Of a DNA stretch of 62,329 nt, positions 49,681-49,925 are shown piece by piece. The position numbers were made by a program, and so were the translations under genes. The notes under the pieces were generated by a model that saw only the letters and a program-made list of their open reading frames with translations, made no database searches and was not told the DNA's origin. Source of the stretch: Octopus bimaculoides (taxonomy: Eukaryota); contig NC_068994.1 in the NCBI RefSeq assembly GCF_001194135.2, positions 56,500,484-56,562,812 on the forward strand, given 5' to 3'. Position 1 is the first letter of the stretch, and each line of letters begins with the position of its first letter.

Positions 49681-49776
49681 AGAATTGAAGTGTTAGCAAA
49701 GTTTCTGCACAGATATGTGTGGGATAAACTCGTCCAGATTGTGTCTGTGTTAGTGGGTTAGTGTGCGTATTACACA

Positions 49777-49866
<90 letters not shown>

Positions 49867-49925
49867 ATCTGGACGAGTTTATCCCACACATATCTGTGCA
49901 GAAACGCTGCTAACACTTCAATTCT
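49681..49925. repeat. 59-bp near-perfect inverted repeat enclosing a 127-bp (TG)/(CA)n spacer
   Basis: 49681-49739 versus the reverse complement of 49867-49925: 57/59 identical (AA vs GC is the only difference). Confidence 0.97.

What the first reader, a model, noticed from the sequence alone, without database searches (positions are those of the whole stretch)
49681..49925. 57/59-bp inverted duplication of non-repeat sequence wrapped around a (CA)n tract
Seen: agaattgaagtgttagca[aa]gtttctgcacagatatgtgtgggataaactcgtccagat (49681-49739) recurs inverted at 49867-49925 with two differences. It matches none of the window's repeat families and has no TSD. Pairing continues inward between tgtgtctgtg and the (CA)n. 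Inference: the (CA)n nascent strand folded back on the upstream TG-rich patch, copied 59 nt and switched back (microsatellite-primed template switching). If transcribed, it gives a ~60-bp nearly perfect dsRNA stem, a candidate hairpin-RNA/siRNA source or ADAR target in a lineage known for extensive A-to-I editing.
Basis: partly seen in the sequence, partly recalled or inferred. Interest (0 to 1): 0.7.

Follow-up and report, generated by a model that had tools for sequence, protein, structure and literature searches.

The report
Fold-back inverted duplication beside a microsatellite
A 59-base stretch of ordinary octopus DNA has been copied backwards onto the far side of a (CA)n microsatellite, most likely by one fold-back copying error during DNA replication or break repair; this is a clean example of a known kind of mutation, and no function has been shown for it.

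Summary
Window 49681-49739 recurs as its reverse complement at 49867-49925 with 57/59 identity. The two differences are adjacent. The arms flank a TG-rich patch and an (AC)47 tract. Chance expectation is about 2e-23. Identity ends sharply at both arm ends. There is no target-site duplication. The arm matches none of the window's repeat families and has no further copy in the ~78 kb of octopus DNA I could search.

The inner end of the left arm abuts a 10-nt patch that is 9/10 complementary to the end of the (CA)n. That is the geometry expected if a (CA)n 3' end snapped back, primed on the patch, copied 59 nt and returned. Both intrastrand template switching and foldback-primed inverted insertion at breaks are published mechanisms that give this product.

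No outgroup, reads or whole genome were reachable, so a low-copy MITE (about 0.2) and a short-read mis-join across the microsatellite (about 0.1) remain open.

The hairpin would be very stable as RNA (-127 kcal/mol on the plus strand, -143 on the minus strand). Transcription, small RNAs and A-to-I editing are untested. Any transcribed inverted repeat in Octopus would be an ADAR substrate. Verdict: a new member of a known kind, of modest interest.

The parts
49681..49739 (+). Left arm (59 nt). Under the favoured polarity it is the source that was copied. It is ordinary, locally unique sequence.
   Evidence: 57/59 reverse-complementary to 49867-49925; no other copy in the window; mismatches rise from 2/59 inside the arm to 25/30 immediately outside (p = 5e-15).
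49699..49700 (+). The only two positions where the arms differ: AA here, against GC in the reverse complement of 49906-49907. They are adjacent, so probably one tandem substitution or one copying error.
   Evidence: offsets 18-19; the probability that two independent differences are adjacent is 3.4%.
49740..49771 (+). TG-rich patch (TGTGTCTGTGTTAGTGGGTTAGTGTGCGT) plus ATT. It is a pre-existing imperfect complement of the (CA)n and the proposed landing site of the folded-back 3' end. Its first 10 paired bases (49741-49750) match the end of the tract at 9/10.
   Evidence: 8/29 mismatches, significantly more than in the arms (p = 0.0018), so this zone is not part of the copied block; the patch plus the start of the (CA)n folds on its own (-21.6 kcal/mol).
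49772..49865 (+). (AC)47 microsatellite with one AT interruption at 49782-49783. It forms the loop of the hairpin and is the proposed source of the priming 3' end.
   Evidence: The copy number comes from a short-read assembly and is not reliable: 7 of 18 gaps in the window abut microsatellites.
49866..49866 (+). Junction base C, lying opposite T49740. This is the single mismatch between the priming zone and the copied block.
   Evidence: offset 59.
49867..49925 (+). Right arm (59 nt). Under the favoured polarity it is the inverted copy that was inserted. It joins unrelated, unique right-flank sequence at 49925/49926.
   Evidence: Removing it raises the RNA MFE of the 285-nt region from -127.4 to -47.4 kcal/mol.
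49652..49665 (+). A second small TG patch upstream of the left arm (TGCGTGTGTGTATG), 13/14 complementary to 49781-49794 at the start of the (AC)n. It shows that the neighbourhood is generally TG/CA self-complementary. It is not part of the duplication.
   Evidence: pair I10.

Best explanation
This is a real, locus-specific inverted duplication created in one event by fold-back (snap-back) DNA synthesis. The ancestral locus already held a weak quasi-palindrome: a TG-rich patch followed by a (CA)n microsatellite. A free 3' end lying in the (CA)n folded back on its own strand. That end was either a nascent strand released from a stalled fork or a resected end at a break in the microsatellite. It annealed to the TG patch directly next to unique sequence, through a 9/10 imperfect microhomology with a mismatched terminal base. 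A polymerase then extended it for 59 nt using the upstream sequence as template. The end then returned to the original template or was joined to the other break end. The result is: left flank, A, TG patch, (CA)n, C, A-inverted, right flank. Shown directly: the anatomy, the sharp boundaries, the priming complementarity, the lack of a TSD and local uniqueness. Inferred: the polarity (left arm as source), the single-event origin, whether replication or break repair was responsible, and a young age (0-17 My, so probably after the O. bimaculoides / O. vulgaris split). The sequence most likely has no selected function. If the locus happens to lie in a transcript, the RNA would form a duplex of about 59 bp and would be an ordinary promiscuous ADAR substrate.
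For: Arms match at 57/59, with abrupt loss of identity outward (25/30 mismatches) and inward (8/29). That pattern marks a discrete copied block, not a decayed long palindrome. The inner end of the source arm abuts TGTGTCTGTG, which is 9/10 complementary to the last ten bases of the (CA)n. Because that patch is short and sits directly next to the arm, priming there explains why the copy starts exactly at 49739; the opposite polarity would need priming at one particular register within 47 repeat units. The TG patch and (CA)n form a hairpin without the right arm. There is no TSD above chance. The arm is absent elsewhere in the window, absent from 23 kb of O. bimaculoides, and not part of any of the window's repeat families. 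Of 53 dinucleotide tracts in the window, only this one has inverted unique flanks, which argues against a systematic assembler artefact at microsatellites. The two arm differences are adjacent (P = 3.4% if independent), consistent with at most one later mutation or one copying error. Published precedents: intrastrand template switching yields perfect reverse-complement hairpins in one event, even at loci with no prior similarity (PMC10710096). Foldback inverted insertions of 2 to about 150 bp are primed at a 10-bp imperfect inverted microhomology with a 41-nt loop (PMC11724301). Template switching expands imperfect inverted repeats (PMC13100816 abstract).
Against: No ancestral or sister sequence was available, so the 'before' state is hypothetical. 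Genome-wide copy number is unknown: only about 78 kb of octopus DNA was searchable, which excludes only families of roughly 1e5 copies or more. The protein-ORF route to other assemblies failed its own positive control. The assembly is short-read and gapped, and the arms are joined across a 94-nt microsatellite that may have been gap-closed. The first copied base is a mismatch (C49866 opposite T49740). The return junction shows no assessable microhomology. At 59 nt the insert is longer than most reported foldback insertions (most are under 34 bp, though they range to about 150 bp).
Confidence: 0.6

Rival explanations
1. The 245-bp unit is a miniature inverted-repeat transposable element (or a foldback-type non-autonomous DNA transposon) with 59-bp terminal inverted repeats and an internal TG/CA microsatellite. 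It was inserted here by a transposase.
For: The size (245 bp), the lack of coding capacity (no Pfam hit) and the near-full-length self-complementarity are typical of MITEs. TIR elements, including Tc1/mariner, are active in Octopus, and structure-based finders report MITEs there (PMC13282606). A mariner remnant lies in the same window. One point mutation would restore a TA/TA flank (cTA|GAATTG...CAATTC|TTt). Absence from about 78 kb does not exclude a family of thousands of copies.
Against: There is no TSD above chance. No second copy was found in the window or in L003. The arms show no similarity to the window's mariner region. Identity drops sharply at the inner arm ends (2/59 against 8/29), and the inner zone is just a TG patch facing a pure microsatellite, as expected from priming and not from an element's internal sequence. 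The termini (AGAATTG...) do not resemble the usual Tc1/mariner, hAT, piggyBac or PIF ends (my own knowledge, not tested).
Confidence: 0.2
2. Assembly artefact. The two arms are not adjacent in the animal's genome. Two dispersed copies of the sequence, each next to a TG/CA microsatellite, or a small mis-placed contig, were joined across the microsatellite during scaffolding or gap closure of a short-read assembly.
For: The window is a scaffold with 18 N runs, and 7 of them abut microsatellites, so the assembler often failed at such tracts. The piece to the left of the (CA)n is only about 770 nt long (49007-49771). A 94-nt pure repeat is about one short-read length, so its closure is inherently uncertain. 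From memory, the O. bimaculoides draft was a Meraculous Illumina assembly with a contig N50 of about 5 kb; I could not verify this because the paper is not held.
Against: The arms have different outer flanks and differ at two bases, so two distinct arm-flank junctions must exist in the reads. An artefact would therefore still need a two-copy sequence with identical outer boundaries, both copies next to a TG/CA tract, brought head to head by coincidence. The TG-to-CA transition (GTGCGTATTACACAC) is unique sequence and not a graph ambiguity. No other microsatellite in the window shows the pattern. Fold-back chimeric library molecules would continue into the reverse complement of the left flank and would not switch cleanly to 4.5 kb of unrelated right flank.
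Confidence: 0.1
3. Whatever its origin, the hairpin is a selected RNA gene or regulatory element: a hairpin-RNA or endo-siRNA source, a young miRNA-like locus, or a dedicated ADAR substrate.
For: Predicted RNA hairpins are extremely stable on both strands (-127 and -143 kcal/mol, z = -16.9 and -13.6). The stem meets the criterion of at least 40 bp at over 95% that a published survey used for potential dsRNA. O. bimaculoides shows the strongest hyper-editing signal among the surveyed animals (PMC5625713). Template switching is documented as a source of new miRNA hairpins (PMC10710096).
Against: There is no evidence of transcription. No exon or known RNA family was found in the window. Permissive Rfam hits are far below threshold and cover only the TG/CA core (best 35.8 bits against a gathering score of 90). 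A 127-nt microsatellite loop and a 59-bp stem do not fit the 30-55-nt stems with central loops used to define miRNA-like hairpins. Near-identity of the arms is explained by youth and needs no selection.
Confidence: 0.05

Closest known systems
Template-switch mutations (intrastrand switch; quasi-palindrome extension) as described for primate and rodent genomes and de novo miRNA hairpins (PMC10710096)
   Same: One event writes the reverse complement of nearby sequence into the same strand and creates perfect base pairing for a whole hairpin. It can extend a pre-existing imperfect inverted repeat. There is no TSD and the change is local.
   Different: Here the copied block is 59 nt and the loop is a microsatellite of about 127 nt; the miRNA-like cases were defined by 30-55-nt stems with a central loop. 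The priming site is a microsatellite/TG-patch complementarity. No parent-child sequence comparison is available here, and that comparison is how such events are normally called.
Foldback-primed templated inverted insertions at double-strand breaks in yeast (Pol delta synthesis plus NHEJ/alt-EJ capture; PMC11724301), and Pol theta 'snap-back' templated insertions (PMC4912351, PMC5728401; titles only)
   Same: A resected 3' end folds back on a roughly 10-nt imperfect inverted microhomology with a loop of tens of nt, is extended, and the new DNA is joined to the other end. The outcome is a longer inverted repeat. The reported size range (2 to about 150 bp) includes 59 nt.
   Different: Most reported events are under 34 bp. 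Those were induced breaks in yeast or cell systems, whereas this is a germline, fixed or segregating product in an octopus. Sequence alone cannot tell whether a break or a stalled fork started it.
MITEs / palindromic non-autonomous DNA transposons (for example the palindromic Harbinger-derived repeat of Xenopus that is heavily ADAR-edited, PMC5625713)
   Same: A short, non-coding unit that folds on itself into a tight hairpin. It would be an ADAR substrate without needing a neighbouring inverted copy.
   Different: No TSD, no additional copies found, no relationship to a known autonomous element, and an interior consisting only of a microsatellite and its imperfect complement.
Inverted SINE pairs as dsRNA/ADAR substrates (Alu-pair paradigm). 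An example in this window is 28643-28834 / 28980-29173.
   Same: Two inverted copies a short distance apart, able to form dsRNA if co-transcribed.
   Different: Those arms are two independent insertions of a multi-copy family (85% identical, also present in O. bimaculoides L003). The arms at 49681 are a 97%-identical duplicate of unique sequence.

Membership tests
Template-switch / foldback templated inverted duplication | The new segment is the reverse complement of sequence a short distance away on the same chromosome | tested here: met
   57/59 identity, 127 nt apart
Template-switch / foldback templated inverted duplication | Discrete switch points: identity ends abruptly at both ends of the copied block | tested here: met
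   2/59 mismatches in the arms, 25/30 outside (p = 5e-15) and 8/29 inside (p = 0.0018)
Template-switch / foldback templated inverted duplication | Inverted (micro)homology at the priming site, directly next to the copied source | tested here: met
   49741-49750 against 49856-49865 is 9/10 complementary, with one mismatched junction base. The core hairpin exists without the right arm.
Template-switch / foldback templated inverted duplication | The ancestral or sister sequence lacks the inverted copy (parent-child comparison) | not testable with these tools
   No other Octopus assembly or reads were reachable for this locus. ORF-based look-ups and collection scans were all empty, and the positive control was also empty.
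Template-switch / foldback templated inverted duplication | Single locus, not a dispersed family | tested here: inconclusive
   No further copy in 55 kb of window plus 23 kb of O. bimaculoides. That excludes only very abundant families.
MITE | Terminal inverted repeats; small (under about 800 bp); non-coding | tested here: met
   245 bp, 59-nt arms, no Pfam domain. Any inverted duplication meets this, so it does not discriminate.
MITE | Target-site duplication flanking the TIRs | tested here: not met
   The best candidate is a 3-nt match that needs a boundary shift, with a 58% chance probability. TA/TA would need one mutation.
MITE | Multiple dispersed copies with the same termini | tested here: inconclusive
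   None in about 78 kb. The whole genome is not searchable here.
MITE | TIRs related to those of an autonomous element | tested here: not met
   No similarity between the arms and any other part of the window, including the mariner remnant at about 22.6-23.4 kb. External transposon libraries were not available.
miRNA precursor / known structured RNA family | Match to a curated covariance model at its gathering score | tested here: not met
   0 hits at gathering thresholds. The best permissive hit is mir-297 at 35.8 bits against 90, on the TG/CA core only.
miRNA precursor / known structured RNA family | Hairpin geometry of a pre-miRNA (stem of about 30-55 nt, short central loop) | tested here: not met
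   59-bp stem, extended to 88, with a 69-127-nt microsatellite loop. Criteria as quoted.
ADAR hyper-editing substrate (long near-perfect dsRNA) | Reverse-oriented partner of at least 40 bp at over 95% identity within 2 kb (criterion of PMC5625713) | tested here: met
   Both arms qualify. They account for most of the complex-sequence windows that qualify in this window (6.6e-4 of 50-bp windows overall).
ADAR hyper-editing substrate (long near-perfect dsRNA) | Transcribed, with clustered A-to-G mismatches in RNA reads | not testable with these tools
   No RNA-seq access

The most novel reading that the evidence does not exclude
Microsatellite-primed fold-back copying could be a recurrent mutational process in the extremely microsatellite-rich octopus genome. 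By continually turning unique sequence next to TG/CA tracts into near-perfect hairpins, it would supply part of the unusually large pool of dsRNA substrates behind Octopus hyper-editing, and occasionally new small-RNA loci. This locus would be a freshly made example caught before decay.
Probability: 0.08. Interest if true: 0.6.

Novelty: new member of a known kind. Interest (0 to 1): 0.27.

Why it matters
If the origin is confirmed, this locus is a clear germline example in a cephalopod of a hairpin made in one step by fold-back synthesis, with the priming microhomology, the copied block and the junctions all still readable. It shows how a microsatellite and a nearby imperfect complement can seed a long inverted repeat. 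It also suggests a simple genome-wide question: how many of Octopus's potential dsRNA structures arose this way and not from inverted transposon pairs? In this window, nearly all sequence that meets a published 'potential dsRNA' criterion is self-complementary microsatellite, which matters for how that published statistic is read. On its own, one untranscribed-as-far-as-known inverted duplication in non-coding DNA has no demonstrated biological consequence.

Tried and rejected
1. I looked for independent copies of the locus through ORFs that span the arm-flank junctions. Exact look-ups and a homology search with a joined query found nothing.

2. A positive control with peptides read through two clearly multi-copy repeat families of the window also found nothing. 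The protein collection therefore does not cover this organism's non-coding DNA, and the negative result says nothing about copy number.

3. Exact-pattern scans of the arm in metagenome contigs (two patterns) and viral contigs gave 0 hits.

4. A search for exons to anchor orthologous loci found only a mariner HTH fragment among all stop-to-stop ORFs of at least 55 aa.

5. The mariner relatives led to JGI contigs that share nothing else with the window, so they come from a different organism. They also led to one 23-kb O. bimaculoides locus, which was useful for the taxon check only.

6. My first attempt at the Porath-type statistic with whole-window BLAST missed this locus, because the HSP ran into the TG/CA zone and fell below 95%. 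I redid it per 40-mer.

7. The idea that the right-hand (CA)n is the homogenised copy of the TG patch, meaning the duplication originally covered the patch too, is rejected. It would need many microsatellite-driven changes within a time in which the arms gained at most one mutational event.

8. Chance, tRNA-derived structure and a known RNA family are rejected.

9. The original O. bimaculoides genome paper could not be retrieved.

10. A search meant to document a microsatellite origin for mir-297 and mir-466 gave nothing usable, so that resemblance is not used.

Full report
**Observation.** Window 49681-49739 (AGAATTGAAGTGTTAGCAAAGTTTCTGCACAGATATGTGTGGGATAAACTCGTCCAGAT) recurs as its reverse complement at 49867-49925, with 57 of 59 positions identical. 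The two differences are adjacent: 49699-49700 AA against GC on the partner. Between the arms lie a TG-rich patch (49740-49768) followed by ATT, an (AC)47 tract at 49772-49865 with one AT interruption, and a single C at 49866. Because the TG patch is partly complementary to the tract (21/29), the repeat finder reports an 88-nt inverted repeat at 89%. The first ten paired bases of the patch, TGTGTCTGTG, match the last ten bases of the tract at 9/10. An i.i.d. model predicts about 2e-23 such repeats in the window. No dinucleotide shuffle folds as well (RNA -127.4 kcal/mol, z = -16.9; DNA -80 kcal/mol, z = -15.6).

**Context.** The window is 34.5% G+C, extremely rich in microsatellites (164 TRF rows), and is a scaffold with 18 N runs. 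The feature lies in contig 49007-54482. No exon-like ORF was found. The only protein-like ORF is a Mos1-type mariner HTH_48 fragment at 22756-23121. No Rfam family reaches its gathering score, and ARAGORN finds no tRNA.

All four interspersed repeat families that I defined within the window occur in a 23-kb locus of the O. bimaculoides assembly GCA_001194135.2 at 72-90% identity, the same range as between copies inside the window. They do not occur in five JGI-held contigs that share only the mariner.

**Is it a repeat family or a one-off?** Sensitive blastn (word size 7) of either arm against the window finds only the partner arm. A masked self-comparison places the pair in no family. The arm is absent from the O. 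bimaculoides locus L003. Only two other close inverted pairs of complex sequence exist in the window, and both are more diverged. One of them (28643-28834 / 28980-29173, 85%) is simply two copies of an interspersed repeat that is also present in L003. Of 53 dinucleotide tracts in the window, only this one has inverted unique flanks (score 54 against a null of 9.2 ± 5.4).

This excludes only a very abundant family, because just about 78 kb of octopus DNA could be searched. Attempts to reach other assemblies failed: ORFs spanning the junctions and exact DNA patterns in public collections found nothing. A positive control with peptides from clearly multi-copy repeats also failed. Those negatives therefore say nothing about genome-wide copy number.

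**Anatomy that bears on mechanism.**
- Boundaries are sharp. There are 2/59 mismatches inside the arms, 25/30 in the 30 nt outside (p = 5e-15) and 8/29 in the inner TG/CA zone (p = 0.0018). A discrete 59-nt block was copied. The inner pairing is a different, older and compositional complementarity.
- There is no target-site duplication. The best candidate is 3 nt and needs a boundary shift, which occurs by chance 58% of the time. A TA/TA flank would need one mutation.
- The short TG patch lies immediately next to the left arm. A (CA)n 3' end annealing there is forced into a register that starts copying exactly at 49739. The opposite polarity would need priming at one specific register among 47 repeat units, so the left arm is the more likely source.
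- With the right arm removed in silico, the TG patch and (CA)n still form a hairpin (core -21.6 kcal/mol). The event adds about 80 kcal/mol of stability.
- The two arm differences are adjacent (3.4% if independent). They suggest one tandem substitution or a copying error.
- Using the calibration implied in an O. vulgaris repeat study (JC 0.09 at 25 My, about 0.0036 per site per My), the arms are 0-17 My apart. That is younger than, or around, the O. bimaculoides / O. vulgaris split (13-34 My).

**Most likely mechanism.** A free 3' end in the (CA)n folded back on its own strand. It annealed to the TG patch, was extended for 59 nt along the upstream unique sequence, and then returned to the original template or was captured by the other break end.

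Two published mechanisms give exactly this product. The first is intrastrand template switching during replication, which creates perfect reverse-complement hairpins in one event, can act where no prior similarity exists, and was first proposed for extending quasi-palindromes (PMC10710096; PMC13100816 abstract). The second is foldback-primed templated inverted insertion at double-strand breaks. In yeast it uses a 10-bp imperfect inverted microhomology with a 41-nt loop, needs Pol delta plus end joining, and yields insertions of 2 to about 150 bp, most of them under 34 bp (PMC11724301). Pol theta snap-back synthesis is a related route (titles only). Sequence alone cannot tell a stalled fork from a break. 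I put about 0.6 on this family of explanations.

**Rivals.** A MITE or palindromic non-autonomous transposon (about 0.2) fits the size, the non-coding nature and the self-complementarity, and TIR elements are active in Octopus. It is disfavoured by the missing TSD, the lack of other copies, the lack of similarity to the local mariner, and an interior that is only a microsatellite facing its imperfect complement.

A mis-join across the microsatellite in a short-read scaffold (about 0.1) is made plausible by the gap structure: 7 of 18 gaps abut microsatellites, and the left piece is only about 770 nt. However, the arms have different outer flanks and differ at two bases. An artefact would therefore still need two genomic copies with identical boundaries, each next to a TG/CA tract, brought head to head by coincidence. 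No other microsatellite in the window shows the pattern.

A selected RNA function (about 0.05) has only structural support.

**Function.** Either strand, if transcribed, would form a duplex of about 59 bp: 18 bp, a 2-nt internal mismatch, then 39 perfect bp, continuing imperfectly into the TG/CA zone. The locus meets the sequence criterion that Porath et al. used for potential dsRNA, namely at least 40 bp at over 95%, reverse-oriented, within 2 kb.

Applying that criterion to this window gives 5.6e-3 of 50-bp windows, close to their published 4.4e-3 for O. bimaculoides. Nearly all of that comes from self-complementary microsatellites. Complex sequence contributes 6.6e-4, mostly from this locus. 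In that survey O. bimaculoides has the strongest hyper-editing signal, and most editing is in non-coding repeats. Editing of this hairpin, if it is transcribed, would therefore be generic and not special.

Permissive Rfam hits (mir-297, mir-466 and others) are far below threshold and cover only the TG/CA core. The long microsatellite loop is unlike a pre-miRNA (criteria). Transcription, editing and small RNAs could not be tested.

**Comparison and novelty.** The structure works like, and most probably is, a template-switch or foldback inverted duplication. It meets the structural features that define that class, but the defining ancestral-state test could not be run. It fails one defining MITE feature (the TSD) and is undetermined for another (copy number). 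It is not a member of any curated RNA family. I rate it a new member of a known kind. Interest is modest (0.27): it is a tidy, readable example in a lineage where dsRNA sources matter, but it is a single non-coding event with no demonstrated consequence, and its reality in the animal is still unverified.

**Decisive tests.** These are a genome-wide BLAST of the arm, orthologous loci in long-read Octopus assemblies (I predict no right arm), read or PCR support across the locus, and RNA and small-RNA mapping.

Noticed in passing
window 22571-23400 (ORF 22756-23121, + strand): Remnant of a Mos1-type mariner transposase (Pfam HTH_48, E = 1.5e-19), with no intact full-length ORF. Its closest relatives (77-82% nucleotide identity over about 450 nt) lie on contigs of two JGI metagenome samples (3300002931, 3300002938). 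Those contigs share none of the window's other repeats, so they come from a different organism. An annotated O. bimaculoides SETMAR-like protein is only 62% identical. This patchy distribution is typical of mariner horizontal transfer.
   Followed up: partly
window 28643-28834 and 28980-29173: Two copies of an interspersed repeat in inverted orientation, 146 nt apart (about 195 nt, 85% identical). The same family occurs at 10625-10725 and in O. bimaculoides L003:5534-5720. It is a conventional inverted-repeat-pair dsRNA candidate and contrasts with the unique-sequence duplication at 49681.
   Followed up: partly
window 3248-3303: An (AC)12 tract abuts a (TG)n tract directly, forming a perfect microsatellite palindrome. 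Together with (AT)n and GATA/TATC arrays (for example 147-210 / 437-496), such simple-sequence palindromes account for almost all of the window's sequence that meets the published 'potential dsRNA' criterion (5.6e-3 overall, 6.6e-4 for complex sequence). The high published octopus value may therefore be largely microsatellite-driven.
   Followed up: partly
window 42542-43006: A 257-bp unit present in 1.8 tandem copies (80% match). It contains a SINE-like family that recurs at least eight times in the window (14241, 20816, 20996, 28512, 52717, 55971, 60835 and others) and in O. bimaculoides L003. ARAGORN detects no tRNA-like head in any copy.
   Followed up: partly
window N runs, e.g. 14984, 17412, 18809, 24686, 44783, 46041, 57038: Seven of the 18 assembly gaps abut a microsatellite on at least one side. 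At 57038-57088 the same (TG)n flanks both sides. Contigs therefore tend to break at microsatellites, and the lengths of microsatellites that were closed should not be trusted.
   Followed up: yes
window 32668-32734 and 32853-32920: A further short inverted pair (69 nt, 81% identical, 119 nt apart) next to a TATC array. Its origin was not examined.
   Followed up: no
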